Part shown: positions 40,168-53,842 of the stretch, in pieces
Position numbering within the stretch: position 1 is the stretch's first letter
Layout: every line of letters starts with the position of its first letter
IMG/VR virus record: IMGVR_UViG_3300034050_000451
Coordinates: 206,866-270,865 of that record
Direction: 5' to 3' (one strand)
Length of the DNA stretch: 64,000 nt
Made by a program: the position numbers and the translations under genes
The notes under the pieces: generated by a model
Told to the model about the DNA's origin: nothing
Seen by the model: the letters and a program-made list of their open reading frames with translations, nothing else
The model's database searches: none

Positions 40168-41559
40168 TTAATTCAATTTAAATAGTTCGTATGATTTACG
40201 AGGTTTCCAATTTTCAAAGGTTCCTTCCATTCCATCAACTAATGTTTTACACATATTTTCTGAACTTAATCCTATTTCACCAATGAAAGCTTCTCTTCCC
40301 TTTAATCCATTCTCTAAAAGAGTTTCTTTTGGTGTATTGTACATATCCATCATTGCTTTAGCAACATCATAGATATCAACTTTATCATCCCAAATATATG
40401 GTGTTGGAACTGAACCTGTTAATGATTGTGCTCTACTCCATACAGGTCTAACCCAAGGTCCTGGTTCTAATTTATCTTCCCAATCTCTCCAATTGTGAAG
40501 TGAACCAATTTTGATATAATCTTCCGAATTAACCAATTTTCCACTATCTTTATACCTAAAACCACATTGGTCTTGCAAACCACCAGTTACGTTTACGATA
40601 ATTGGGGTACCAGCCATTATAGATTCAGCGGTTGTTAATCCAAATCCCTCATTACCAGCGATATTGATTGTTACATCAGCCATATTGTATAGGTAATTTA
40701 ATTCATTTGTAGTTCTACGTTTATCTGAAAATATAACGTTACAATTTGGTGCTAATGTACTATAAACCGTTGGTAAATCGGTACCATTTTCATCGATAGG
40801 TTGTGTGTGCATCACTAAGCAAACTTTAGATGCTTTTTCTTCACCCAATTCCTCACAAAATTGTTTAAATGCCATAATAACATCAGATGGTTGTTTTCTA
40901 CGAATATTTCGGTTTGACCAAAAGAATACAAAATCATATTCTTTACCACCTAATATCTCAGAACGAAATTCGGCTGGTACTTCTGTTGGGAAATATTCTT
41001 TTGAATTAATACCATGTGGTACATAGGATACCTGCCAATCTGAATGAGGTTTCCAAGTTGGCTTGTCCGTTAATGCGGTTAAACGGGATACGATACCATA
41101 GGTTTGACGAGAAATGCATCCAATCCAATCACAACTTTCGTAATAGTTACGATTATATAATGGGTCTGGTAAATCATCCCAAATAGCGTAAAACATAATT
41201 GGAACATTTTGTCTAATCTCATGCTCCATCTCATATAACCAAATCCAATATCTCGGGTCGGTAAAGTGTAATATAGCATCAGGTTGTTCAGCGTTGATTA
41301 ATTGTCTAACCAATCCAGCATCACCATATCCAGTCCAAGGTAGTATTTTAACACTAGCATCTGCTACACCAGTTTGAGCGGCAACATCAACAGATACATC
41401 CAATACTTTACCTTGCTCAGGGTGATTAATTGCGGCTCCTACTTGGAACCAATCGTACTTGTCAACAGTACCCATTACTAATGCTTTGCTCATAGTGGCA
41501 ATACCACTTGCCATTCGCAAATCATCAGAAAGCAATAAAATCTTTTTCTTTTTATTCAT
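40168..41559 (-). CDS. GT4-like glycosyltransferase
   Basis: PHG, NRNIRRK, NEGFGL..AES, TGGLQDQ. Confidence 0.88.
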   Translation of the reverse strand: MNKKKKILLLSDDLRMASGIATMSKALVMGTVDKYDWFQVGAAINHPEQGKVLDVSVDVAAQTGVADASVKILPWTGYGDAGLVRQLINAEQPDAILHFTDPRYWIWLYEMEHEIRQNVPIMFYAIWDDLPDPLYNRNYYESCDWIGCISRQTYGIVSRLTALTDKPTWKPHSDWQVSYVPHGINSKEYFPTEVPAEFRSEILGGKEYDFVFFWSNRNIRRKQPSDVIMAFKQFCEELGEEKASKVCLVMHTQPIDENGTDLPTVYSTLAPNCNVIFSDKRRTTNELNYLYNMADVTINIAGNEGFGLTTAESIMAGTPIIVNVTGGLQDQCGFRYKDSGKLVNSEDYIKIGSLHNWRDWEDKLEPGPWVRPVWSRAQSLTGSVPTPYIWDDKVDIYDVAKAMMDMYNTPKETLLENGLKGREAFIGEIGLSSENMCKTLVDGMEGTFENWKPRKSYELFKLN

Positions 41560-41829: not shown

Positions 41830-42696
41830 TTAAGAAATCCCATCACATAAACCTCGTTGGCCGAATTCACAAAATTTACAATTCTTTTTTCGTTCTCCGG
41901 GGTTTTTTGGATATGGAACATCTCTAAATTTACCCTCATCATCAAATACACTATTCACAAATTCCATAAACTCACCATATACTTTATTTACAGTTGGTTT
42001 TCCAGATGCAGGAATGTGTTTTGACATATATGGAATTGGAAATGGAGCCTCTTCAGGCATTTTCCTTCTCATAATCTGATACTCTACTTTGATTTTATCC
42101 AAAGGAATATTAAATAATTCAGAATAATATTTTTTATAGATTATAATCTGAGCGTTCTTTAACTTATCAGCTTTTTGGTACTTATTCCATCCCATTGTTG
42201 ATGTTTTTAAATCAATGATGATAATTTCACCAGTTGATAAATCTCTCATTACAATATCGATAAATCCAATAAGATATACACCTTCTTTAATAGGTGCATT
42301 AAGTGGAATTTCAATTCCAACTAATTCAAACCCAGTTTTAGTGTAGAACTTATCTAATTTCTTTTTGAACCACTCAAGGATTCTTCTACCATCACCATAG
42401 AACTCTTCTAACTCCAATTGGGTACATATTACACCCGAACTAAGTTTTTCAGTTTCTTTGATATATTCTTTACGCATCCATTCTAATAATAACTTATCAG
42501 TATCAATTAGTTCCGCTTGCTTTTTAGAAACCCCATACATAACCGAAAGGAAATGTTGGATTGTTTCGTGCATTGCGGTTCCAAAGAGTGTATGAATATT
42601 GGCAGAACTTTCACCCAACTTATCGATGTATCTCAACTTATATTGTTGAGGACATGAACTCCATGTTGAGAATTGTGAAAAACTTACTTTTGCCAT
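41830..42696 (-). CDS. PD-(D/E)XK (RecB/Cas4-like) exonuclease
   Basis: SFSQ, CP, GTAMH, GFID, DLKT, Q...Y, CKFC..C. Confidence 0.85.
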   Translation of the reverse strand: MAKVSFSQFSTWSSCPQQYKLRYIDKLGESSANIHTLFGTAMHETIQHFLSVMYGVSKKQAELIDTDKLLLEWMRKEYIKETEKLSSGVICTQLELEEFYGDGRRILEWFKKKLDKFYTKTGFELVGIEIPLNAPIKEGVYLIGFIDIVMRDLSTGEIIIIDLKTSTMGWNKYQKADKLKNAQIIIYKKYYSELFNIPLDKIKVEYQIMRRKMPEEAPFPIPYMSKHIPASGKPTVNKVYGEFMEFVNSVFDDEGKFRDVPYPKNPGERKKNCKFCEFGQRGLCDGIS

Positions 42697-44487: not shown

Positions 44488-45708
44488 TTATCTACCTACT
44501 TCACTCAATCTCTGAGCCTTAAAATCTTCCCATTCTACACCAATACCATCTATGTAATATAAATGTTCCGGTTTTAATCTACCTTCATCATGCAACTTAG
44601 AATATCTCTTAATTGCCTGTCTTTTCCACCACTTATTAATGTAATCATATCCTTCAGCGAACTTTGGTTTCATTACCAATTCAGATTCTTCAATTTCTGA
44701 ACGTAGGAACTCAGGTCCATTTTCATAAATCATAGCGAGATATACACCTCGTTTAAACCCATGATGATATTCATTTGCTTTAATGTTACATTCTTTGAAT
44801 ATCTGTCCCAAAATCTTTTGTTTAATACCACTTACAGGTCCACTAGCTCCTTCACCAGTACCCATATTAGCCCCATTACGGATTCGTTCGTTTGTGATAG
44901 CAGTTTGATACCACTCTGCACGATTTTCCTTAATCCATTGATGCCAAGGGTCATAGAATTTATCATCCGGCTTTAAACTAATTTTACCAGCTGATTCACC
45001 TAATGTTTTAAAGTGAGGAATTCCATTGTATTGTGAATGTATTCCATAAAGGGAAGTTGTACCAACTGCTATTAGAGTTTGTCCGTACTTCTTTTTCCAA
45101 AATTCCCTAACTTCCGGAACCGTAGTCATCATTGCGGTTAACTTACCCCCTAAGAAGTTGTAACCAAGTGGCTGAGTACATACAATAGATGATGCAATAG
45201 TTGTATAGTTAAGTTTACCTTTAGCAAATTTATCTTCCTTAGTCCAACCAATGTAGTTATCTCTAACACCCATTGCGGTTACATCGGATGCTAATGAAAC
45301 TAATCCTAACAATTTACCACTATTCCTATCTTTTATAAATATCTTCACATTTCGACCAGGATTTGCTGTCCAACTCATTGTGTGAATCATTTTACGAACA
45401 TAAGTCCATTTGGTAGATTGTACTGCATCATCTTCAACAATCTCAACATAAGGGTCTAACTCTTCGATTTCTCTAATAGTTAGTTCCTTATTATTGATAT
45501 CAGTTGGTTTCCATTGAGTATCATATAGAGATGCCATTTGGGATTTATCCCTAAACATAGATTCCTCCTGCAACTCTACCCATTTTTTGTATAAGGTTTG
45601 TTCTTCTACACTCATTGTCATAAGGTAGTTCATATTTTCGATGAGTTTTTGTTTCTCATCTTCAAATACAAATATTGGTTTTTGCGGTTCGGTATCCCAA
45701 AAGCTCAT
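44488..45708 (-). CDS. DUF4338 (DruA-like) protein
   Basis: PGRN, LGGKL.A, TTSLYG..SQYN, G.S.G, H...RGVY. Confidence 0.7.
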   Translation of the reverse strand: MSFWDTEPQKPIFVFEDEKQKLIENMNYLMTMSVEEQTLYKKWVELQEESMFRDKSQMASLYDTQWKPTDINNKELTIREIEELDPYVEIVEDDAVQSTKWTYVRKMIHTMSWTANPGRNVKIFIKDRNSGKLLGLVSLASDVTAMGVRDNYIGWTKEDKFAKGKLNYTTIASSIVCTQPLGYNFLGGKLTAMMTTVPEVREFWKKKYGQTLIAVGTTSLYGIHSQYNGIPHFKTLGESAGKISLKPDDKFYDPWHQWIKENRAEWYQTAITNERIRNGANMGTGEGASGPVSGIKQKILGQIFKECNIKANEYHHGFKRGVYLAMIYENGPEFLRSEIEESELVMKPKFAEGYDYINKWWKRQAIKRYSKLHDEGRLKPEHLYYIDGIGVEWEDFKAQRLSEVGR

Positions 45709-45728
45709 ATGCTACTTTTTAGTTGTTA

Positions 45729-46424
45729 TTATTTAATCTCTACTAAGTAATAATTTGATACATAGTCACCATCGGTAAATGATAACGTTGCCAATCCCTG
45801 TGATGAGATTTGTAATGATGAGGTTGTTGAACCTCTATTAGCCATTAAGATAGCTTTTAGGTATTTTGCTGAGAATGCAATTGCATCCACATTACCTTCA
45901 CATTTACAATCTACACCAATTGAGATTCGGTTAGAGTTTATTGATGAGTATCCTAAGATAATTTCACCTTTACCATCTTTACAAGTGAATGTAAATGTAT
46001 CAGCGTCAGCTAATGCTCCTTTAGATTTGATGAATTTATTAATAAACTCATTATCTAATGTAATATTTACATTGAATGGTGGAAGTGCTTTCAAGTCAGG
46101 TACCGATGGGATAACTGATGGTGCTGCCAACATATACTGAACTTTTGTTCCTTTATCAGAGAACTTCAATGCCCCAGTAACTTCCTCAACAGTGATACCA
46201 TTATCTAATACACTTAACAAACCTCTTAATTGAGATGTGGTGTAAATACCGAACTCACCATTTGGGAATTCCGATTCTACTACACTTACATCACCTAATA
46301 AGGTTTTGTCATCTGAAATCATTCTAACTGATACGCTTGTATCATCTGATTTTAACATTACTGATTCTACTTCACCACCAAGGTTGTAACGATTGATGAA
46401 GCCATCTAATTTTAATTTTTCCAT
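45729..46424 (-). CDS. Sliding clamp (gp45-like)
   Basis: FGIY...L...LS, size and position between clamp loader and polymerase. Confidence 0.8.
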   Translation of the reverse strand: MEKLKLDGFINRYNLGGEVESVMLKSDDTSVSVRMISDDKTLLGDVSVVESEFPNGEFGIYTTSQLRGLLSVLDNGITVEEVTGALKFSDKGTKVQYMLAAPSVIPSVPDLKALPPFNVNITLDNEFINKFIKSKGALADADTFTFTCKDGKGEIILGYSSINSNRISIGVDCKCEGNVDAIAFSAKYLKAILMANRGSTTSSLQISSQGLATLSFTDGDYVSNYYLVEIK

Positions 46425-46488: not shown

Positions 46489-49005
46489 TTAAAATGCAAA
46501 AAACTTTTCTGCTGTTTTGGTTGAGGATAAAACCTCTCCCCAATTTAATGCTCCATAGAAATCTTCCAATTTCTTAAGGAGTTCCCTTTCAAAGATTTTA
46601 TCATAATCAATGTAGGTAGTTACTAAGTCCATAATTTCTTTTGGGTCACTATAACCATTTAATCCAACTGCATCTAATCCAAATGGGTTTTGTTTAAGAT
46701 ATACCCATTTAATTTTATCACCATCTTTTAATGGTGCAAATTGATTTTCTAAACCAAAATGAATTAATAGTTGATTATATGCAATAGATGCTTTAACGTG
46801 TGCTGGGCAACCTGATGGGAATTGAAACATTGCCGTTTGTTGTTTCTTCTTTGGCATGTACTTTGTTAAGTTTTTAACTGCTCCGGCTTTAGCAATCTTA
46901 ACAACATCCATATTAACCAATTCTTTTTTGAAATTATAAACTTTATCAGTTATTTGGGTTTCCGTATCACCTCTAAGAATTTCAATTAATATTTCTCCCA
47001 TAAACTTACGGAAAGCCGCTGGGTATGATGACCTAACCACATCTAATCCCTTTACATCCAATCTATCACAAGGTACACCATTATCGGAAATAATCCATTG
47101 TGCGTATCTCTTTTTAGCAATCCAAATACCAGCTTTTGATACGAATTCCTTTTTAATTTCAAATCTATGCTTATCAATGTTGAATACCCTTTTACCTAAG
47201 ATATCATAGAAGTCATTTAGGTAATTCTGCATCTCACCAGCTATATCATTTACATAACCAGCAATTACATCCTGCTCATCATTTTTCCAATTTGGAATTC
47301 GATGGTCTAAAAGAGGAACTGCGGAGAAAAATACCGAATCAGTATCAATATATATATTACTGTCAGCATCAGGAGTGCCAAGCTCCTTATTGTATTTGAT
47401 GTTAGCCATATCAGCTGTGCTTTTAATAACTGTCTGTCCCGTAGTGGTAACAGCGGTAGCATTATCAACATCATAGAACCTAAAGGCAGGAAGACCAAGC
47501 ACCCCATATAAAGAGTTAAGTAAAATTTTCTGAACCAGCTGGCGTTTTTTATAGAATGCGTACTTTTCTTTATCTCCCTCATCACCATATTTTTTTTCTA
47601 ATTTTCTAAATTCAACCCTTTGAGAGAACCATAAGTCCAATATATCAGGAATACAACCCGGTGTATCCGTTCTATACATAACACCATTTGATGCTACGGA
47701 ATATTTACTTTTCTCTAATAGAATTTTTAGATTTTCTTTTGTTATGTAATTATCACCAACTTTATACTCATTAACTTCACCTTTTAAGTATTTTTGTGCA
47801 TCCCAATCTTCCAACTTACCAACTTTGGTTTCTGGTGAGATATTGATACTCATAATGATTGATGGATATAGGGAAGTTAAATCCAAATCATAAATCCAAT
47901 CATATTTTCCAACAATAGGTGCTTTAACATATGCTCCAATGAATTTCTCTTCATTATTTTCCTTAAGAGCTTCCATTCTCTCTCTTCTATCAGCAGGTTT
48001 GTTAGGTGCTACAATGTTCTTTCTTTTAAGATAACATAATAATGCTCCTTCCAAATACTTTGATGAATATACGAAATCTTCATATGGAACGTGTCCTGCG
48101 TGGCAGATACCTCTAGCGGTATCTATGAATTGTAGTTTCTTATCAAAATCAACAACTAACTCAACATCGACTAAGTTATACTCAATAAACTTTTCAATAT
48201 CATCTCTGAATAAGATATCTAAGTTTCCTTCATATTCAATCTTACCCCTACCCAATTCTCTTTGAGCAATGGTATCTAATCTATATGAATCTAATTCTGA
48301 ATATGTGAAGTTTTTATAAAGTGAAAGGTAATCCAAATAAGATACACCTGCCATAAAATACCTTTTACGATATGGTGACCAAAAACACTGTCCAATTGGT
48401 GATAATCTATTTGCATGTCTTTCACCCAATAAACGTTTGATACGATTATATAACATTGGTGTATCGAAATAATCAATATTCCAACCAGTTACAATAGATG
48501 GATTTATATACTCATACAATTCCAAATATTTCATTAACATATCTTCTTCATGTGTAAACGGAATAACGATAGCTTTATCAGTTTTACGCTCTACCATTTG
48601 ACCTTTTTTATCCATTACTAATACCCAATATTGGTTAGTAGCAGAATCATGCAGTGCAATTGATGTTAATTCATTCTCTGCTTTTTCTGGGTCAGGTAAT
48701 CCACTCTCCATCTCACACTCAATATCATATGTAAGTGTAACGTGTCCTTCAGATGGAATATCCGAATTGGTGTACATATCTACTAAAACTCTCGTAGTTT
48801 CAGGTACATCTGATTCAAATAGTGTAGGGTCATCTCCTTTGAATTTATAAATCTTAGTCACCTTATCTCCATATAGAGTGGTGTACTCACCATTTACTGC
48901 TTTTTCATAAGCATATCGGGTATATGGAAAACTCCTATACCCTTGAGTATCATCCCACAAATGGACTAAGTTCTTTTCTCTTTGATAATATATGTTTGAA
49001 TACAA
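46489..49005 (-). CDS. Family B DNA polymerase (TTG start)
   Basis: DIE, GWN..FD exo motifs; DLTSLYPS, KILLNSLYG, YIDTDS, KKRY. Confidence 0.97.
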   Translation of the reverse strand: MYSNIYYQREKNLVHLWDDTQGYRSFPYTRYAYEKAVNGEYTTLYGDKVTKIYKFKGDDPTLFESDVPETTRVLVDMYTNSDIPSEGHVTLTYDIECEMESGLPDPEKAENELTSIALHDSATNQYWVLVMDKKGQMVERKTDKAIVIPFTHEEDMLMKYLELYEYINPSIVTGWNIDYFDTPMLYNRIKRLLGERHANRLSPIGQCFWSPYRKRYFMAGVSYLDYLSLYKNFTYSELDSYRLDTIAQRELGRGKIEYEGNLDILFRDDIEKFIEYNLVDVELVVDFDKKLQFIDTARGICHAGHVPYEDFVYSSKYLEGALLCYLKRKNIVAPNKPADRRERMEALKENNEEKFIGAYVKAPIVGKYDWIYDLDLTSLYPSIIMSINISPETKVGKLEDWDAQKYLKGEVNEYKVGDNYITKENLKILLEKSKYSVASNGVMYRTDTPGCIPDILDLWFSQRVEFRKLEKKYGDEGDKEKYAFYKKRQLVQKILLNSLYGVLGLPAFRFYDVDNATAVTTTGQTVIKSTADMANIKYNKELGTPDADSNIYIDTDSVFFSAVPLLDHRIPNWKNDEQDVIAGYVNDIAGEMQNYLNDFYDILGKRVFNIDKHRFEIKKEFVSKAGIWIAKKRYAQWIISDNGVPCDRLDVKGLDVVRSSYPAAFRKFMGEILIEILRGDTETQITDKVYNFKKELVNMDVVKIAKAGAVKNLTKYMPKKKQQTAMFQFPSGCPAHVKASIAYNQLLIHFGLENQFAPLKDGDKIKWVYLKQNPFGLDAVGLNGYSDPKEIMDLVTTYIDYDKIFERELLKKLEDFYGALNWGEVLSSTKTAEKFFAF

Positions 49006-49047
49006 ATTTCTTTTATTTAATTGTTCTACAAATATACGATAATTTTT

Positions 49048-50169
49048 TTACTTATCAAAAGTATTTCTCGCATTATTTACGAAGTTTTCTTCGATTTTCC
49101 AACTTTTAAGTTGAGATTCCCATAATAGTGATTGAGCAATGTGAGTTATATCAGGTCTTTCAATTTCACCATCTAATAATTTAACAACCATTTCTTTAAA
49201 TTCTTTTTTTCCATTGTAAAGAAGTGGGTATTCGTTACCAACCATTTCAGGGTAACAAAAATCATTAGGTAGTAAATAAGGTACACCTCTACTTAACCCA
49301 TCAGTTGCACTCATACTCCATGCTGAATAACCTTGAAACGTTCCTACACCAAAATGAGCTTCTGCTAATTGATTCATATAAACATTCCTATCAGCATGTC
49401 CAATATATTTGGTATATGGTTTATTCATATTGTTTAAGGAAGTCCAAACTTCAAAATCTTGTCTTTCTTTCCATAGGTTATCCATAGTTTCAAAAAACCA
49501 ATCTGAACCTGTATATACACCTTCTCTATGATTAAACACAATAGTTTTTGGTTTATATGTTTGAGTTGGTGTTGCTGAATCGCATCCTAAATACCAAGGT
49601 TGAATAATCTCTTCTAACTTATCAGTAATATGCGATTTAAATGTTTCTTTTGCTCTTTTAATAACCAAATCTTTAACCCATTGTGAGTTTACACCACAAA
49701 CCTTCATTTGTAACATGCCTTTCACATTTCTCCAAAATGAATTATCATCTCTAGCACCATTATCTTTAATTTCCCACCAATGACAATAACCAATAATAGG
49801 TTGTGTTTTATTGTAAATACGAGTAATTTTAAACTCATTAGTCCATTCAGGTAAATGTGACCAAATTAGATTAAATTCACCATTATATTTTTCAATAATT
49901 CGGTTGAAGAAATTATTGGGATAATCTACTCTCATTTTTGGTGGAAAACAATCCAATCCATCCATTTTAACCAACTTAACATTGGGATATTCAAATTGAT
50001 TGATTATACCAGGGTGGTTATTTAAATCTGGGTATGGGAGAATCCATTCCCATTCTTTTCCTATTTCGGTGTTGTCTAAAAATGACTTAAACACCAATAG
50101 GAACGAATCCCTATTGATGTCTTTTGCCATACCAAAATTTGTGTAATTAGGTATTACTAATACTCTCAT
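49048..50169 (-). CDS. GT-B glycosyltransferase adjacent to polymerase (candidate DNA glycosyltransferase)
   Basis: YCHWWE, FNHR, WSMSATDG...GVP, YPEMV. Confidence 0.65.
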   Translation of the reverse strand: MRVLVIPNYTNFGMAKDINRDSFLLVFKSFLDNTEIGKEWEWILPYPDLNNHPGIINQFEYPNVKLVKMDGLDCFPPKMRVDYPNNFFNRIIEKYNGEFNLIWSHLPEWTNEFKITRIYNKTQPIIGYCHWWEIKDNGARDDNSFWRNVKGMLQMKVCGVNSQWVKDLVIKRAKETFKSHITDKLEEIIQPWYLGCDSATPTQTYKPKTIVFNHREGVYTGSDWFFETMDNLWKERQDFEVWTSLNNMNKPYTKYIGHADRNVYMNQLAEAHFGVGTFQGYSAWSMSATDGLSRGVPYLLPNDFCYPEMVGNEYPLLYNGKKEFKEMVVKLLDGEIERPDITHIAQSLLWESQLKSWKIEENFVNNARNTFDK

Positions 50170-50174
50170 CCATT

Positions 50175-51698
50175 TTATTTTAAAATTGCTTTATTTGATT
50201 TTCTGATATTTGATGTTTTATTTCTGATTACTAAATTTTGTATAGTAGTTTCATTACCACTTGCTCTAGCATCAATATGGTCACCTTCCATAATTGAATT
50301 AGTACCCATTAGTTGCTCAAATGTGAACTCATTCCCATCAGCATCAATCCAATCATTTTGAATTGCTGCGTTTAATTTTTGTTTTTTAGTATAGTTTGTA
50401 GTATCAATTAAAGTAATAACACCACTAGCGAAAAGTTTATCATAACTTTTATAAAACTTTTCCATAATCATAGTAGAACGAATTTGTATATCATCCGTTT
50501 TCTTAGCTCCACATTTTCTTTTAAATGATTCGGCGTTTGTTGATTTCTTACCAGTAATAGGATGTACATAATCTTTTCCAGTTGCCGGGTCTATAAGGAA
50601 TTCATCTTCCTTTCTCAAAGTTGCTTCAGTTTTTGCAAACCAATCGATAAACTTTTTATAACTATTAATTTTTATCTCCTTATCTTTATTATTCATTGGG
50701 TGAGATGGAGTATTCAATACCGTCATTAATATAAATAAGTTATCTAAGAATGTTCTTTCAAATTTAACATCTCCGGCTGAATTTGCTAATTCTATCGATT
50801 TACTGATTAATGATTTAGTATCATTCATTCTCTTTTTACTATGTTTTGGTAATCCTTCAATTGAAGCCATAGTATCTAACATAGAATTCTTTGGCCAACT
50901 ATATATGTTACCCTCCAATACGTTGTAATAATATGCAAACCATTCAGCTATTATAAGTGCATCACCCTTTTTCAAAAGAGAGTAATCGCTTGATAGATTC
51001 TTTGTATTATTAAACATTGCTGTTAATAATGGGTTATTATTCATAAATGAATGTAGGAATCTATTGAATTGAGATGGTATGATAATTCTTCGTTCATTAT
51101 CATTCCAAGGTTCTCCGATATTGGTATAGATTGTAATATCAACCATATCCTGCAAAGTTGCTTTTTCAACTAATACAATTGTAATTGGTAAATCCAATAC
51201 TTGCTTTTGAGTAAGTTCCGGCATATCTTTGAAATATATACCTTTCATTTCAAATGGTATTGTATTACCATCTTTACTTTCGATTAAATCAATTACTGAT
51301 TCTGTAATTGTAAATTTGGAATTTAAATAGTCAGAATAACATTCCACTCTATGTTGACCATCTATATTTAGATAACGATATCCTAACTTTGTTAGGTTTT
51401 GTAAGTAATCAATTGTTTCTTTAACAGATTCATATCTGTCATCTCCTTCAGAATATTGAGATATCAATGATTCACAATAGTCTAAACATCCATCAATACT
51501 TACTAATACAATTGTGTAGATATTTGAGTGTCCAATTAAACACGCTTTCATATGTTTTGCTGATGTTGTATCCTCCCACTTATCAAGCAATCTTTGTAAT
51601 TGATGCTTATCCACATAAATATAAGGGGACATTTCTCTTAGTTTGTTTAGAGTTCCACCAGAAAGAACTTTTGCGCTAATTGATTTTTTAATAGCCAT
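50175..51698 (-). CDS. DUF262 (ParB-like) + C-terminal HNH protein, GmrSD/SspE-like architecture
   Basis: LQR...W, IDGQHR, TNIGEPW; EGDHI...G..T..NL...N..KS. Confidence 0.7.
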   Translation of the reverse strand: MAIKKSISAKVLSGGTLNKLREMSPYIYVDKHQLQRLLDKWEDTTSAKHMKACLIGHSNIYTIVLVSIDGCLDYCESLISQYSEGDDRYESVKETIDYLQNLTKLGYRYLNIDGQHRVECYSDYLNSKFTITESVIDLIESKDGNTIPFEMKGIYFKDMPELTQKQVLDLPITIVLVEKATLQDMVDITIYTNIGEPWNDNERRIIIPSQFNRFLHSFMNNNPLLTAMFNNTKNLSSDYSLLKKGDALIIAEWFAYYYNVLEGNIYSWPKNSMLDTMASIEGLPKHSKKRMNDTKSLISKSIELANSAGDVKFERTFLDNLFILMTVLNTPSHPMNNKDKEIKINSYKKFIDWFAKTEATLRKEDEFLIDPATGKDYVHPITGKKSTNAESFKRKCGAKKTDDIQIRSTMIMEKFYKSYDKLFASGVITLIDTTNYTKKQKLNAAIQNDWIDADGNEFTFEQLMGTNSIMEGDHIDARASGNETTIQNLVIRNKTSNIRKSNKAILK

Positions 51699-51716
51699 AA
51701 TAATTTAATTTTTTTT

Positions 51717-51788
51717 GGTATCGTTGTTGTGGTGATACCTTTACCACATTGTTTATTTTGAACTCATATAAGGGTGAGTTCTTACCCT
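51717..51788 (-). promoter_or_regulatory. Two tandem H-type RNA pseudoknots in the 5' UTR of the DUF262-HNH gene
   Basis: AGGGT-AA-GAACTC-ACCCT-TATAT-GAGTTC and TGTGGT-AAA-GGTATC-ACCACA-ACAAC-GATACC; all pairs Watson-Crick. Confidence 0.75.
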
Positions 51789-51800
51789 ATCTTTATAACA

Positions 51801-51832
51801 CTAAGATACGAATTATAATTCATATAGCAAAA
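51801..51832 (-). promoter_or_regulatory. Class I promoter driving the pseudoknot leader
   Basis: TTTG-N19-TATCTTAG. Confidence 0.6.
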
Positions 51833-51880
51833 TGTTTTTTAATTATTTTATAACTAATTGATTATCAATAAGTTAGTATT

Positions 51881-52684
51881 TTACCAAAAATTGATGTCAT
51901 TACTCTCTTCTGGTGCGTATGTAGTGTGATGTACTACTTCGGTATTATAATCGTTTAAATCCTTTGGATATGGCTGTATTGGATGTTTTAATCTACCCAT
52001 CAAGTCCTTTCTCTCCTTCTTATTTTGGGGTAATATTTGAATATACCTATGTTTTGGTGGTTCTTCTCTTCTCCAAAACTCCTTATATCCATCCTTTCCA
52101 ATTTCCTTTCTAAGATGCTCCAAATTACCACTTCCCCAGTTATTATAAACTGTCCTACTATGAATCCAATCGAATGGGTCATTAATTAATGAAATTCCCC
52201 AATTTGGCATCAATGCAATATCAGTATTTAATCCCTGATAAATCCAATTGGTAGCTTTGTATATCCCACCAACGTGTCCTTGTCCATTATTAGCGTATGA
52301 TAGTAATACTTTAATATTAGTATCATTTTCTCTAATCCATTGGAATGTTTTACCTAATGCACAACTTTCAATATTTGAACCATATCCATCATCAACATAC
52401 AAACGGGTAAGTTCTAAGATGTTATCTTTTGTTAACCCATCACATACCGATGTTGGTGCTTTGGCTCCAACAGGGAACCCATAAACTGCTACTCCAACTA
52501 ATTTGTTATCTGAAAACCCAACTGATGTTTCATCTTCTCTATAATAGATACCCAATGCGTATCTACATGCTGTCCAAGCATGAGTGTAGTGTTTTTTAAC
52601 AATCATATCTTTAGCGATAGATTTAGCAATAGGAGCTACACTTACTCTACTGGCATCAACATAATGTTTACCTTCTTCTTTCAT
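51881..52684 (-). CDS. Mom-like GNAT DNA-modification protein, copy 1
   Basis: HY, LVGVAVYG, LELTRL, IES, SYA...GHVGGIYKATNWIYQG, KHRY. Confidence 0.8.
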   Translation of the reverse strand: MKEEGKHYVDASRVSVAPIAKSIAKDMIVKKHYTHAWTACRYALGIYYREDETSVGFSDNKLVGVAVYGFPVGAKAPTSVCDGLTKDNILELTRLYVDDGYGSNIESCALGKTFQWIRENDTNIKVLLSYANNGQGHVGGIYKATNWIYQGLNTDIALMPNWGISLINDPFDWIHSRTVYNNWGSGNLEHLRKEIGKDGYKEFWRREEPPKHRYIQILPQNKKERKDLMGRLKHPIQPYPKDLNDYNTEVVHHTTYAPEESNDINFW

Positions 52685-53074: not shown

Positions 53075-53842
53075 TTAATTTGATATTTCCAAATTAATCG
53101 GTTCCATTTTTGTAATTTGTTCTATAAATTCCTCATTTTCCTTTGGATATGGGAATAATGGGTGCTTTATGGTTTTCATAAGTTTCCTACGTTCGCCACC
53201 TTTTGAGAGAATATACACATATCTATGTTTTCTTGGGTTCTTTCGTATCCAAAACGTAGATGATGCTATCTTTTGGATTTCAGTTGGATTGTTAGTTCCA
53301 AATTTGACATAAGATGTTCGTTGGTGGTGCCAATCACCATCTTCTTCCCATCGAAAATCCCAACTATCGTTAAATCTTAGTTTGTTACCCTGATACAACC
53401 AATTTGTGGCTTGATATATAGTACCACAATGTCCTTCTTTCGGGTCTGAATATGATATTAGTGCTTTAATGTTTGGTACATTTTCTCTTAACCAATCAAA
53501 TGTTTGAGATAGGAACCAACTTTCAATATTAGAACCATAACCATCAAATACAAATAATCGAGTTAATTCTAATACCTCATCCCGTTCTAATAGGGGTGTA
53601 ATTGATTGCCCAGCACTTCTACCTATTGGGTCACCATAACAAGCAACTCCAATTAATTTATCTTCTACATTACTAAAGAATGTATGCTCTTCTACTTCAG
53701 AGGTAAATAAACCAATAGCATAGGATACTTTAGTCCACAAACCACTATAATGATTGTTTACTATAATATCCTTTGCTACCGATTTGGTTATTAATCTAAT
53801 TGATAGCTTTGAAGTATCGCAATATTGTTTGTTTTCTTTCAT
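53075..53842 (-). CDS. Mom-like GNAT DNA-modification protein, copy 2
   Basis: HYS, LIGVACYG, LELTRL, IES, SYSD..EGHCGTIYQATNWLYQG, KHRY. Confidence 0.8.
   Translation of the reverse strand: MKENKQYCDTSKLSIRLITKSVAKDIIVNNHYSGLWTKVSYAIGLFTSEVEEHTFFSNVEDKLIGVACYGDPIGRSAGQSITPLLERDEVLELTRLFVFDGYGSNIESWFLSQTFDWLRENVPNIKALISYSDPKEGHCGTIYQATNWLYQGNKLRFNDSWDFRWEEDGDWHHQRTSYVKFGTNNPTEIQKIASSTFWIRKNPRKHRYVYILSKGGERRKLMKTIKHPLFPYPKENEEFIEQITKMEPINLEISN

What the first reader, a model, noticed from the sequence alone, without database searches (positions are those of the whole stretch)
49048..51698. GmrSD-like nuclease co-transcribed with a glycosyltransferase: possible phage glyco-restriction/modification pair
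Seen: the genes are 5 nt apart, behind one promoter and the pseudoknot leader, directly upstream of PolB, which has its own promoter at 49029. Established: bacterial GmrSD cleaves sugar-modified hmC phage DNA. Inference: here the phage carries both; the GT may protect self DNA while the nuclease attacks host or competitor DNA. The self-contained layout suggests an exchangeable cassette.
Basis: inference. Interest (0 to 1): 0.62.

Follow-up and report, generated by a model that had tools for sequence, protein, structure and literature searches.

The report
Swappable phage nuclease beside core glycosyltransferase
A large lake-water phage has a GmrSD-like DNA-cutting enzyme gene 5 bases upstream of a sugar-transferase gene. 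Related phages show the sugar-transferase is a fixed part of the replication/DNA-modification block while the nuclease is a replaceable extra, so the two are neighbours, not a dedicated pair.

Summary
The anatomy is real. Two minus-strand ORFs (50175-51698, 507 aa; 49048-50169, 373 aa) lie 5 nt apart, between two copies of a phage promoter-like motif, just upstream of PolB.

The 507-aa protein has no Pfam hit. By fold, motifs and profile-linked relatives it is a ParB/Srx (DUF262/GmrSD_N-like, DGQHR) domain, then a helical linker, then a Cas9-type HNH domain with invariant D-H-N-N residues.

The 373-aa protein is a GT-B/GT4-like glycosyltransferase by fold.

The "pair/cassette" reading fails. 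In about 130 related loci the GT is a core gene of a conserved block: Mom-Mom-[slot]-GT-PolB-orf231-DruA-like. The nuclease is one of at least three alternative occupants of the slot, which can also be empty. Phages with 98% identical flanks carry unrelated slot genes, and the breakpoint falls exactly at the GT start codon.

No hmC pathway was found; the only ThyA homologue is canonical.

Most likely the nuclease is a selected, exchangeable accessory endonuclease used in host or phage conflict. Its relation to the phage's own Mom/GT DNA modification is inferred only. A covarying tandem-pseudoknot leader precedes it.

Verdict: a new, divergent member of known kinds, of moderate interest.

The parts
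53075..53842 (-). Mom-like DNA-modification gene (paralogue B), part of the conserved backbone
   Evidence: Pfam Mom PF25680 1.5e-44; own-genome search; present upstream in nearly all related loci
51881..52684 (-). Mom-like DNA-modification gene (paralogue A, P0004), upstream edge of the variable slot
   Evidence: Pfam Mom 5.5e-44, PHROG 1384 1.1e-46; synteny
51800..51811 (-). Promoter-like phage motif (variant TCGTATCTTAGT) ahead of P0001
   Evidence: Motif T[CT]GTATATTTGT occurs 16 times on the coding strand and 2 times on the other, always intergenic. The same motif is in relatives' leaders. Function as a promoter is inferred.
51760..51788 (-). Leader pseudoknot A (AGGGT / GAACTC / ACCCT / GAGTTC)
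   Evidence: Pattern scan gives 0.85 expected per strand. Compensatory changes in both stems across 8 distinct homologous leaders. No Rfam match.
51717..51747 (-). Leader pseudoknot B (GTGGT / GGTATC / ACCAC / GATACC)
   Evidence: Stem 1 is seen as GTGGT, TCGGT, GAGGT, GGGGT, GCGGT and AAGGT, each with a matching partner.
50175..51698 (-). P0001: ParB/Srx (DUF262-like, DGQHR) domain + helical linker + HNH endonuclease; accessory gene in the variable slot
   Evidence: AlphaFold model pLDDT 80.9. VIA-align: BrxU Z 7.5, SspE Z 6.9, Cas9 HNH Z 6.3. BFVD top hits are viral DUF262/GmrSD_N proteins, best 1.6e-9. Of 86 proteins scanned (85 profile-linked relatives plus P0001), 24 hit Pfam GmrSD_N and 24 hit HNH or HNH_4. 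dN/dS 0.045-0.27.
51348..51362 (-). DGQHR motif (residues 113-117), predicted NTP-binding loop of the ParB/Srx domain
   Evidence: Invariant in 24 family members. D, G and R are nearly invariant in 86-112 distant relatives. Role taken from the GmrSD literature (PMC4619093).
50190..50303 (-). HNH nuclease core (residues 466-503; D473, H474, N488, N497)
   Evidence: The four residues are invariant. Structural match to Cas9 HNH domains. Pfam HNH is sub-threshold, E 0.022.
50170..50174 (-). 5-nt spacer AATGG between P0001 stop and GT start; downstream breakpoint of the slot
   Evidence: In relatives the swap boundary is exactly at the GT start codon.
49048..50169 (-). P0002: GT-B fold, GT4-like glycosyltransferase; core gene always next to the PolB block
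   Evidence: Model pLDDT 88.7. Foldseek: MshA 3.1e-13, BshA, PimB', phage HY126 DNA glycosyltransferase 2.8e-9. 422 homologue clusters. Synteny. A relative weakly hits Glycos_transf_1, E 4.6e-4.
49028..49039 (-). Promoter-like motif TCGTATATTTGT ahead of PolB
46489..49005 (-). Family B DNA polymerase (TTG start)
   Evidence: Pfam DNA_pol_B and exonuclease domain, PHROG 262 8e-184
44488..46424 (-). orf231 (45729..46424, no family) and DruA-like gene (44488..45708); downstream end of the conserved backbone
   Evidence: Pfam DruA PF14236 3.2e-19; conserved order in relatives

Best explanation
Shown:
- The GT (49048..50169) is a GT-B/GT4-like glycosyltransferase.
- It belongs to a conserved block of a widespread group of uncultured aquatic phages: Mom - Mom - [variable slot] - GT - PolB - orf231 - DruA-like. 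In some lineages the DruA-like gene instead lies between GT and PolB.
- P0001 (50175..51698) is one of several alternative occupants of the slot.
- P0001 is built from an N-terminal ParB/Srx NTPase-type domain (QR..W and DGQHR motifs), a helical linker of about 230 aa, and a C-terminal HNH nuclease with all four catalytic residues.
- P0001 is intact and under purifying selection.
- P0001 is exchanged between phages independently of its neighbours.
- P0001 is expressed behind a promoter-like motif and a covarying tandem-pseudoknot leader, and abuts the GT start.

Inferred:
- P0001 works like GmrSD/BrxU/SspE enzymes. The ParB-type domain binds NTP and reads the state of DNA, and gates cutting or nicking by the HNH domain.
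- P0001 is an accessory conflict weapon against host DNA or co-infecting rival phages.
- The phage's own DNA escapes because of whatever modification the Mom-like enzymes and perhaps the GT install.
- The pseudoknot leader keeps synthesis of a dangerous nuclease low or timed.

The GT's main job is independent of P0001, because most relatives keep the GT without P0001. That job is probably a modification linked to DNA replication.
For: Fold and motifs of P0001. Profile search: 351 relatives. Of the 86 proteins scanned (85 relatives plus P0001), 24 hit Pfam GmrSD_N, 13 HNH, 11 HNH_4 and 1 DndB.

GT fold. A relative gives a weak Glycos_transf_1 hit.

Backbone and slot.

Clean swaps:
- L001 and L033 have flanks 98.2-98.4% identical and unrelated slot genes. 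The breakpoint is at the GT start codon.
- L069, L070 and L071 carry a 658-aa gene, P0001 and an empty slot respectively.

Independent history:
- L078 and L083 have P0001 at 91-92% aa identity to the window, but GT at 56% and PolB at 58%.
- L031 has P0001 at 63%, GT at 84% and PolB at 88%.
- The jump in nt identity is confined to the P0001 ORF.

Selection: dN/dS 0.045-0.27 with dS about 1-2. Only 1 of 27 copies is frameshifted.

Recurring link to DNA-modification genes:
- A 28%-identical relative sits next to a Mom gene in an unrelated phage context.
- 39-40%-identical relatives sit directly upstream of a GT-family gene, preceded by a DruA-like gene where the upstream DNA is held (L098).

Leader.
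Against: - No biochemical data exist. Substrate preference, NTP dependence and any reading of modification are analogy only.
- Pfam GmrSD_N and GmrSD_C do not hit P0001 itself.
- Fold scores are middling: Z 7.5 and 6.9, Foldseek PDB E 0.01-0.2.
- More distant relatives (21-24% identity) sit in unrelated contexts with no modification gene nearby.
- The whole region is mosaic (for example L001 has GT at 81% but PolB at 50%), so independent exchange is not unique to P0001.
- No base-hydroxylating or hydroxymethylating enzyme was found that would give the GT an acceptor on DNA.
- Sporadic occupancy of one intergenic site is also what a homing endonuclease gene would show.
Confidence: 0.5

Rival explanations
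1. P0001 and the GT form a dedicated glyco-restriction/modification pair carried as one exchangeable cassette. The GT sugar-modifies (hm)C to protect self DNA from the partner nuclease.
For: The genes are 5 nt apart behind one promoter-like motif. Both domain calls hold. P0001-type genes at 39-100% identity always lie directly upstream of the GT.
Against: The GT is present without P0001 in most related loci and abuts other genes, or Mom directly. The swap boundary is exactly at the GT start. P0001 and GT have discordant identities. There is no hmC/5hoC-type synthase: the only ThyA homologue is canonical. A 28% relative pairs with Mom and has no GT.
Confidence: 0.07
2. P0001 is a free-standing homing-endonuclease-like selfish gene. 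Its HNH cuts the empty or alternative allele of the Mom-GT junction in a co-infecting phage, and repair copies the gene in. The phage gains no benefit.
For: P0001 shows presence/absence at one intergenic site between conserved genes, with empty alleles (slots of 6-51 nt) and unrelated alternative occupants. It has an HNH catalytic core. Its history is independent of the flanks. Free-standing HNH homing genes of T4-type phages behave this way (PMC2988022, PMC2790892).
Against: At 507 aa with a conserved NTPase-type ParB domain, it is unlike known homing enzymes. No NUMOD/IENR-type DNA-binding modules were found. It shows long-term purifying selection on the whole protein (dS about 1-2, dN/dS 0.05-0.27) and almost no decayed copies. 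It has a dedicated, covarying regulatory leader. There is no elevated identity of the flanks, that is no co-conversion tract, next to the 92% allele.
Confidence: 0.25
3. P0001 is a helper of the DNA-modification pathway, in the manner of the DGQHR proteins DndB or DpdB. It would load, nick or regulate so that the Mom-like enzymes or the GT can act.
For: The DGQHR motif is the DndB-type signature (PMC4619093), and one relative hits Pfam DndB. P0001 lies between Mom and GT, and a distant relative is adjacent to Mom.
Against: Most phages with the same Mom, GT and DruA-like genes lack it, including phages with 98%-identical flanks. It therefore cannot be required for the modification. Its invariant HNH residues argue for real DNA cleavage.
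Confidence: 0.08
4. This rival concerns the GT only. The GT does not modify DNA. It glycosylates a small molecule, a protein or a cell-envelope acceptor, and sits next to PolB only by gene order.
For: The best structural matches (MshA, BshA, PimB', sucrose-phosphate synthase) act on small acceptors. No enzyme that would create a hydroxylated base was found. The genome has two further GT1-family genes.
Against: The GT keeps an invariant position inside the replication/Mom block across phages whose PolB is only 50-60% identical. A solved phage DNA glycosyltransferase (HY126, 9ir0; PMC13326640) is among the significant fold matches. Some relatives add a second GT (GT_PLOD) at the same spot, as in stepwise DNA glycosylation.
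Confidence: 0.35

Closest known systems
GmrSD / BrxU type IV restriction enzymes (DUF262 + DUF1524)
   Same: N-terminal ParB/Srx-fold domain with QR..W and DGQxR motifs, a long helical linker, and a C-terminal His-Me-finger nuclease with a D/E-H-N-N motif. BrxU is the best whole-chain structural match (Z 7.5, residues 9-418).
   Different: Neither Pfam model hits P0001. The motif is DGQHR, not DGQQR. The nuclease resembles Cas9-type HNH (HNH_4 in relatives) rather than DUF1524. It is encoded by a lytic-type large phage, not a bacterial defence island. Its substrate is unknown.
SspE (phosphorothioate-sensing nicking enzyme)
   Same: The DUF262-type N-domain matches (Z 6.9, rmsd 3.6 over 143 residues). 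The logic is that a ParB-type NTPase reads a DNA modification and controls a C-terminal nuclease.
   Different: No PT-modification genes were seen in the window or the related loci examined. The C-terminal domain family differs. The sensing function of P0001 is inference only.
Virus-encoded DUF262/GmrSD_N proteins (e.g. Cronobacter phage GAP32 K4F7C3, Tenacibaculum phage pT24, klosneuviruses)
   Same: These are the closest predicted structures in BFVD (E 1.6e-9 to 3e-4). They show that such genes are already catalogued in viruses.
   Different: They are recognised by Pfam, whereas P0001 is not. Their lengths and C-terminal domains differ. None that I know of has a tested function (my own knowledge; not searched exhaustively).
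Free-standing HNH homing endonucleases of T4-type phages (mobE, seg genes)
   Same: HNH gene wedged between conserved genes. Patchy distribution with empty alleles. Exchange between phages (PMC2988022).
   Different: P0001 is much larger and has an NTPase-type domain. It shows strong long-term purifying selection, a dedicated structured leader and no co-conversion tract.
Phage DNA glycosyltransferases (T-even alpha/beta-GT; RB69/HY126 arabinosyltransferases)
   Same: GT-B fold. The HY126 enzyme is a significant fold match (E 2.8e-9, TM about 0.6).
   Different: It is no closer than dozens of bacterial GT4 enzymes. No hmC or 5hoC synthase is present in this genome. The acceptor is unknown.
Phage Mu Mom
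   Same: The two neighbouring genes are clear Mom-family members. They make a DNA-modification context likely.
   Different: There are two paralogues plus a DruA-like protein and a GT. The chemistry in this phage is unknown.

Membership tests
GmrSD family (type IV restriction) | Sequence match to Pfam GmrSD_N (PF03235, DUF262) | tested here: not met
   P0001 has no hit even at E<=1, and none in NCBIfam or PADLOC. Of the 86 proteins scanned (85 profile-linked relatives plus P0001), 24 do hit PF03235, best 3.4e-13. Homology is therefore transitive, not direct.
GmrSD family (type IV restriction) | ParB/Srx fold with conserved DGQQR-type NTP motif | tested here: met
   The fold matches SspE, BrxU, PadC, sulfiredoxin and ParB-N and viral DUF262 proteins. 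Q35-R36..W41 and D113-G114-Q115-H116-R117 are invariant. The motif is the DGQHR variant.
GmrSD family (type IV restriction) | Alpha-helical linker of 200-400 residues between the two domains | tested here: met
   The model is almost all helix from about residue 200 to 430. This region aligns with BrxU up to residue 418.
GmrSD family (type IV restriction) | C-terminal DUF1524 (PF07510) with (E/D)H..PQ, NL.LL...N and N..F..KK motifs | tested here: not met
   No PF07510 hit. The domain matches Cas9-type HNH structures, and relatives hit HNH/HNH_4. The catalytic pattern D473-H474-N488-N497 is present and invariant. It is the same superfamily but a different family.
GmrSD family (type IV restriction) | NTP-stimulated cleavage of modified (glc-hmC) DNA | not testable with these tools
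   Needs enzyme assays.
GT-B glycosyltransferases (GT4-like) | Two Rossmann-like domains in the GT-B arrangement | tested here: met
   Model pLDDT 88.7, pTM 0.87. At least 500 PDB matches with E<=0.001, best MshA 3.1e-13, TM up to 0.70.
GT-B glycosyltransferases (GT4-like) | Sequence match to Glycos_transf_1 (PF00534) or a related Pfam model | tested here: inconclusive
   P0002 has no hit at E<=1. A 445-aa family member (L124) hits PF00534 at 4.6e-4, 20.2 bits, below the 26.4-bit cut-off.
GT-B glycosyltransferases (GT4-like) | E-X7-E donor-binding motif | tested here: inconclusive
   This rests on hand mapping onto the invariant block Y281-S282-A283-W284-S285...D290-G291...G295-V296-P297. D290 falls at the second acidic position and S282 replaces the first. 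No residue-level structural alignment was available.
Phage DNA glycosylation systems (hmC / 5hoC / hmU based) | A thymidylate-synthase-family enzyme that makes the hydroxylated or hydroxymethylated pyrimidine acceptor | tested here: not met
   The 270,865-nt genome has one PF00303 match. It scores 327 bits and carries PPCH and PFNIASY (Asn, the dUMP type), so it is a canonical ThyA. No TGT/DpdA. The Tet_JBP search found nothing, but its control also failed.
Phage DNA glycosylation systems (hmC / 5hoC / hmU based) | Sugar transfer to DNA | not testable with these tools
   Context only: adjacent Mom-like genes and PolB.
Free-standing homing endonuclease genes | Nuclease gene present or absent at one site between conserved genes | tested here: met
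Free-standing homing endonuclease genes | Cleavage of the endonuclease-free allele and biased inheritance, with co-conversion of flanks | tested here: inconclusive
   Cleavage is not testable here. No tract of elevated identity lies outside the ORF next to the 92% allele, but with dS near 1 the event is old.
   The GT occurs without P0001 in most loci. The swap breakpoint is at the GT start. Identities are discordant.

The most novel reading that the evidence does not exclude
The slot between the Mom genes and the GT is the replaceable 'R' position of a phage-borne restriction-modification-like arrangement. The conserved Mom/GT/DruA-like enzymes put a hypermodification on phage DNA that serves as the self mark. 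The interchangeable slot proteins are P0001 and the unrelated 590-676-aa family with a possible C-terminal His-Me motif. They would be alternative modification-reading nucleases that destroy unmarked host DNA or differently marked rival phages, and they would be traded between phages as an arms-race allele. The tandem pseudoknots would be the translational throttle for this self-endangering enzyme.
Probability: 0.2. Interest if true: 0.75.

Novelty: new member of a known kind. Interest (0 to 1): 0.45.

Why it matters
It corrects an attractive but wrong reading. Adjacency and co-transcription here do not mean a functional pair.

It also defines a conserved, uncharacterised block in a widespread group of large aquatic phages that have no cultured member carrying it: two Mom-like genes, a GT-B, PolB and a DruA-like gene. 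This block is a good candidate for an unknown DNA hypermodification.

Inside that block is a sharply bounded hypervariable slot. One of its occupants is a very divergent GmrSD-type ParB-HNH nuclease that current family libraries miss.

If the nuclease reads the phage's own modification, this would be a virus using restriction logic against its host or rivals. The covarying tandem-pseudoknot leader is a clean, testable regulatory RNA.

Tried and rejected
**Searches that found nothing useful**
- Pfam, PHROGs, NCBIfam and PADLOC on both proteins. Only a sub-threshold HNH hit came up.
- PDB sequence and profile searches: nothing.
- Cultured-phage database: no DNA or protein match to either gene. 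The nearest isolate by PolB (Microcystis phage Mel-JY01, 50%) lacks the Mom/GT block.
- Rfam on the leader: nothing.
- Literature searches for phage-encoded GmrSD, for Mom plus GT and for DruA function gave no direct precedent.

**Tests that were uninformative**
- Generic sigma-70 scan: no better than shuffles.
- Nested folding of the leader: z only -1.75, because the fold is pseudoknotted.
- Metatranscriptome contigs (3101 letters laid, within the operators' limit). Related sequences occur in two RNA libraries, but no contig bridges the P0001-GT junction, and DNA carry-over cannot be excluded. This is no evidence on co-transcription either way.

**The 590-676-aa alternative slot family**
- It has no Pfam hit, no atlas lead and no annotated homologue.
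- Only its C-terminal motif aligns to the P0001 HNH: hhalign E 0.31 against A1, and E 0.0022 at 13% probability against A5.
- I therefore do not call the slot a 'nuclease slot'.

**Ideas rejected**
- The 270-kb record is a concatemer: no.
- Shorter P0001-like hits are decayed copies: they are contig-end truncations. Only L030 has a frameshift.

**Not used**
- Complex prediction, because I do not claim the two proteins bind.
- Any alternative genetic code.
Full report
**What is at the coordinates.**
All genes in this part of the window are on the minus strand. In order of transcription they are:
- a Mom-like gene, 53075..53842
- small ORFs
- a second Mom-like gene, 51881..52684 (Pfam Mom 1.5e-44 and 5.5e-44)
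- a 182-nt intergenic leader
- P0001, 50175..51698 (507 aa)
- five bases, AATGG
- P0002, 49048..50169 (373 aa)
- 42 nt of spacer
- a family B DNA polymerase, 46489..49005
- orf231
- a DruA-like gene, 44488..45708

The window is the last 64 kb of a 270,865-nt virus record that is not a concatemer. The stretch with the two genes (window 48900-52000) recurs in 18 lake-water metagenome runs from 2020-2025.

**Promoter and leader.**
A sigma-70 consensus scan is at chance level. A phage-specific motif T[CT]GTATATTTGT occurs 16 times on the coding strand against 2 on the other, always between genes. One copy lies ahead of P0001 (51811, a variant) and one ahead of PolB (49039). None lies between P0001 and P0002. 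The same motif appears in relatives' leaders.

The leader holds two H-type pseudoknots (51788..51760 and 51747..51717). A pattern scan expects 0.85 such hits per strand in the whole window. Eight distinct homologous leaders keep both knots at about -90 and -48 from the start codon, with compensatory changes in all four stems. Four more leaders keep one knot. A single transcript is inferred, not shown.

**P0001.**
No family library recognises it. The only hit is Pfam HNH at E 0.022, below threshold. Three lines of evidence place it.
- Motifs. Its 46 close homologue clusters conserve Q35-R36..W41, D113-G-Q-H-R117 and G472-D-H474...N488...N497 without exception.
- Fold. The AlphaFold model (pLDDT 80.9) matches BrxU (GmrSD family, Z 7.5 over residues 9-418), SspE (Z 6.9), ParB/sulfiredoxin domains (Z about 5) and Cas9 HNH domains (Z 6.3 over 436-503). 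Against viral models, the thirteen matches at E<=0.001 are, where named, DUF262/GmrSD_N proteins (apart from one 'putative nuclease'), with E down to 1.6e-9.
- Profile-linked relatives. A profile search of 1.8 billion representatives finds 351 relatives. Of the 86 proteins scanned (85 of these relatives plus P0001), 24 hit Pfam GmrSD_N, 24 hit HNH or HNH_4, and one hits DndB.

The defining features listed by Machnicka et al. (PMC4619093) are a ParB/Srx N-domain with DGQQR, a 200-400-aa helical linker and a C-terminal His-Me nuclease with D/E-H-N-N. P0001 meets these in architecture. It uses the DGQHR variant and a Cas9-type HNH instead of DUF1524.

The gene is under purifying selection (dN/dS 0.045-0.27 at dS about 1-2). 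Only one of 27 copies is frameshifted; the other short hits are contig-end truncations.

**P0002.**
It too has no family hit. The model is confident (pLDDT 88.7, pTM 0.87). It is an unambiguous GT-B fold of the GT4 kind: MshA 3.1e-13, BshA, PimB', sucrose-phosphate synthases, and the DNA glycosyltransferase of phage HY126 at 2.8e-9 (PMC13326640). A longer family member weakly hits Glycos_transf_1.

By hand mapping, D290 sits at the second acidic position of the E-X7-E motif and S282 at the first. This is inference.

**The test that decides the interpretation: distribution.**
P0002 has at least 422 homologue clusters, against 46 for P0001. I fetched 131 loci in all and looked at the neighbours. 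The backbone is conserved across phages whose PolB is only 50-60% identical: Mom - Mom - [slot] - GT - PolB - orf231 - DruA-like. In one lineage the DruA-like gene lies between GT and PolB.

The slot holds one of the following:

| Slot content | Loci |
|---|---|
| P0001-type gene | 27 |
| Member of an unrelated 590-676-aa family | 38 |
| 398-aa gene | 2 |
| Nothing (6-212 nt) | 9 |

Some slots add small ORFs or a GT-A (GT_PLOD) gene.

The closest relatives of the window phage (GT 89%, PolB 90%) carry the 607-aa gene, not P0001. Phages with GT at 56% and PolB at 58% carry P0001 at 91-92%, and the rise in nt identity is confined to the ORF.

The clearest cases are these:
- L001 and L033 are 98.2-98.4% identical over 3.8 kb upstream and 7.1 kb downstream. 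Between those flanks they carry unrelated genes, and the downstream breakpoint is exactly at the GT start codon.
- L069, L070 and L071 are one backbone with a 658-aa gene, P0001 and an empty slot.

So the exchangeable unit is the slot gene alone, and the GT is core. The region as a whole is mosaic (for example GT 81% with PolB 50% in L001), so recombination is general here. The presence/absence polymorphism, however, is specific to the slot.

**Is there a glyco-hmC system?**
The genome has one thymidylate-synthase homologue. It is canonical (327 bits; PPCH and PFNIASY). No TGT/DpdA was found. The Tet/JBP search was blank but its control also failed. The acceptor for the GT is therefore unknown, and a DNA role rests on context only: the Mom genes, PolB, and an extra GT in some relatives. 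I put it at roughly even odds against a non-DNA acceptor.

**What P0001 most likely does.**
Three observations argue for a useful accessory gene rather than a decaying parasite:
- all catalytic and NTP-motif residues are conserved
- purifying selection has acted over a long time
- the gene has a dedicated structured leader

P0001 also recurs next to DNA-modification genes. It is adjacent to Mom and GT here. A 28% relative sits next to Mom in an unrelated phage, and 39-40% relatives sit directly upstream of a GT-family gene, with a DruA-like gene before them in L098. This suggests, but does not show, that its activity is tied to the modification state of DNA, as in GmrSD, BrxU and SspE.

Relatives at 21-24% identity sit in unrelated contexts. 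The homing-endonuclease reading fits the patchy single-site distribution and cannot be excluded. A role as an obligatory helper of the modification enzymes is unlikely, because sister phages do without it.

**Comparison with the known, and novelty.**
Virus-encoded DUF262 proteins are already catalogued. GT-B enzymes in phages are common, and free-standing nuclease genes in variable slots are classic in T4-type phages (PMC2988022). New here are:
- two very divergent families that libraries miss
- the sharply bounded slot inside a conserved Mom/GT/PolB/DruA-like block of an uncultured phage group
- the covarying tandem-pseudoknot leader

I rate this a new member of known kinds, interest 0.45. 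The more novel reading, a swappable restriction-like nuclease that uses the phage's own hypermodification as self mark, gets about 0.2 probability.

**Limits.**
- There is no biochemistry.
- Its function is open.

Noticed in passing
window 51717-51788 (- strand): There are two tandem H-type pseudoknots in the 5' leader of P0001. Eight distinct homologous leaders keep both, at about -90 and -48 from the start codon, with compensatory changes in all four stems. Four more keep one. No Rfam family matches. The 398-aa slot gene of L076/L084 seems, by eye, to have a similar knot upstream.
   Followed up: partly
window, 16 sites on the - strand (e.g. 63474, 63016, 56857, 53072, 51811, 49039, 46467, 17995): The conserved intergenic motif T[CT]GTATATTTGT is strongly strand-biased (16 against 2) and is shared with related phages. 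It is probably the promoter of this phage group's replication-module genes.
   Followed up: partly
related loci, slot between MomA and GT (e.g. L016:779-2602, L024:4203-5999, L067:3993-6023, L007:6023-7999): A 590-676-aa protein family with no Pfam, atlas or annotated relative is the commonest slot occupant (38 loci; at least 80 clusters in the word search). Only a C-terminal GH..P..N..LQ..DN motif weakly aligns to the HNH of P0001. In L016 the His position is Gln.
   Followed up: partly
L018:5273-6001, L036:5311-6000 (also L037, L044, L055, L058): Some relatives carry an extra GT-A glycosyltransferase (Pfam GT_PLOD, 5.5e-28 and 9.7e-10) directly upstream of the GT-B gene. This hints at two-step glycosylation.
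   Followed up: partly
window 40168-41559 (- strand): A second glycosyltransferase (463 aa) hits Glycos_transf_1 and Pfam 'GT4-conflict' (PF20706). It lies next to a PD-(D/E)XK nuclease gene (41830-42696). A third GT1-family match is at G000:C1:94892-95263.
   Followed up: no
window 44488-45708 (- strand) and all related loci: A 406-aa DruA-family (PF14236) protein is a fixed member of the PolB block, together with two Mom paralogues. In L001 and L002 a second, 192-aa DruA-like gene lies upstream of the Mom genes. The chemistry is unknown.
   Followed up: no
L099:3069-5284, L100:1531-3746: A 28%-identical P0001 relative (517 aa) sits directly upstream of a 212-aa Mom-family gene, in a different phage context made of many small ORFs.
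   Followed up: partly
L098:419-3300, L124:86-2970: In a more distant lineage, in L098, the order is DruA-like, P0001-like (39-40%), then a 445-aa GT with a C-terminal extension of about 70 aa. L124 shows the same P0001-like/GT pair, but its upstream DNA is not held. The stop and start codons overlap.
   Followed up: no
window 50089-50122 (both strands): A strong hairpin (CAATAGG..CCTATTG core) lies 47-80 nt inside the GT coding region. The terminator scan flagged it on both strands. It overlaps the conserved DINRDSFLLV codons. Conservation of the structure was not checked.
   Followed up: no
G000:C1:199671-200753 (L090:1501-2583, - strand): The thymidylate synthase homologue has about 95 extra residues in insertions but a canonical active site (PPCH, PFNIASY, GDTHLYLNH).
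   Followed up: partly
Read laying on window 48900-52000, run X20 (marine metatranscriptome): A 91-93%-similar contig ends exactly at the GT start (50169). It continues into sequence that reads as the end of a Mom gene. This is an empty-slot relative present in a marine RNA library.
   Followed up: no
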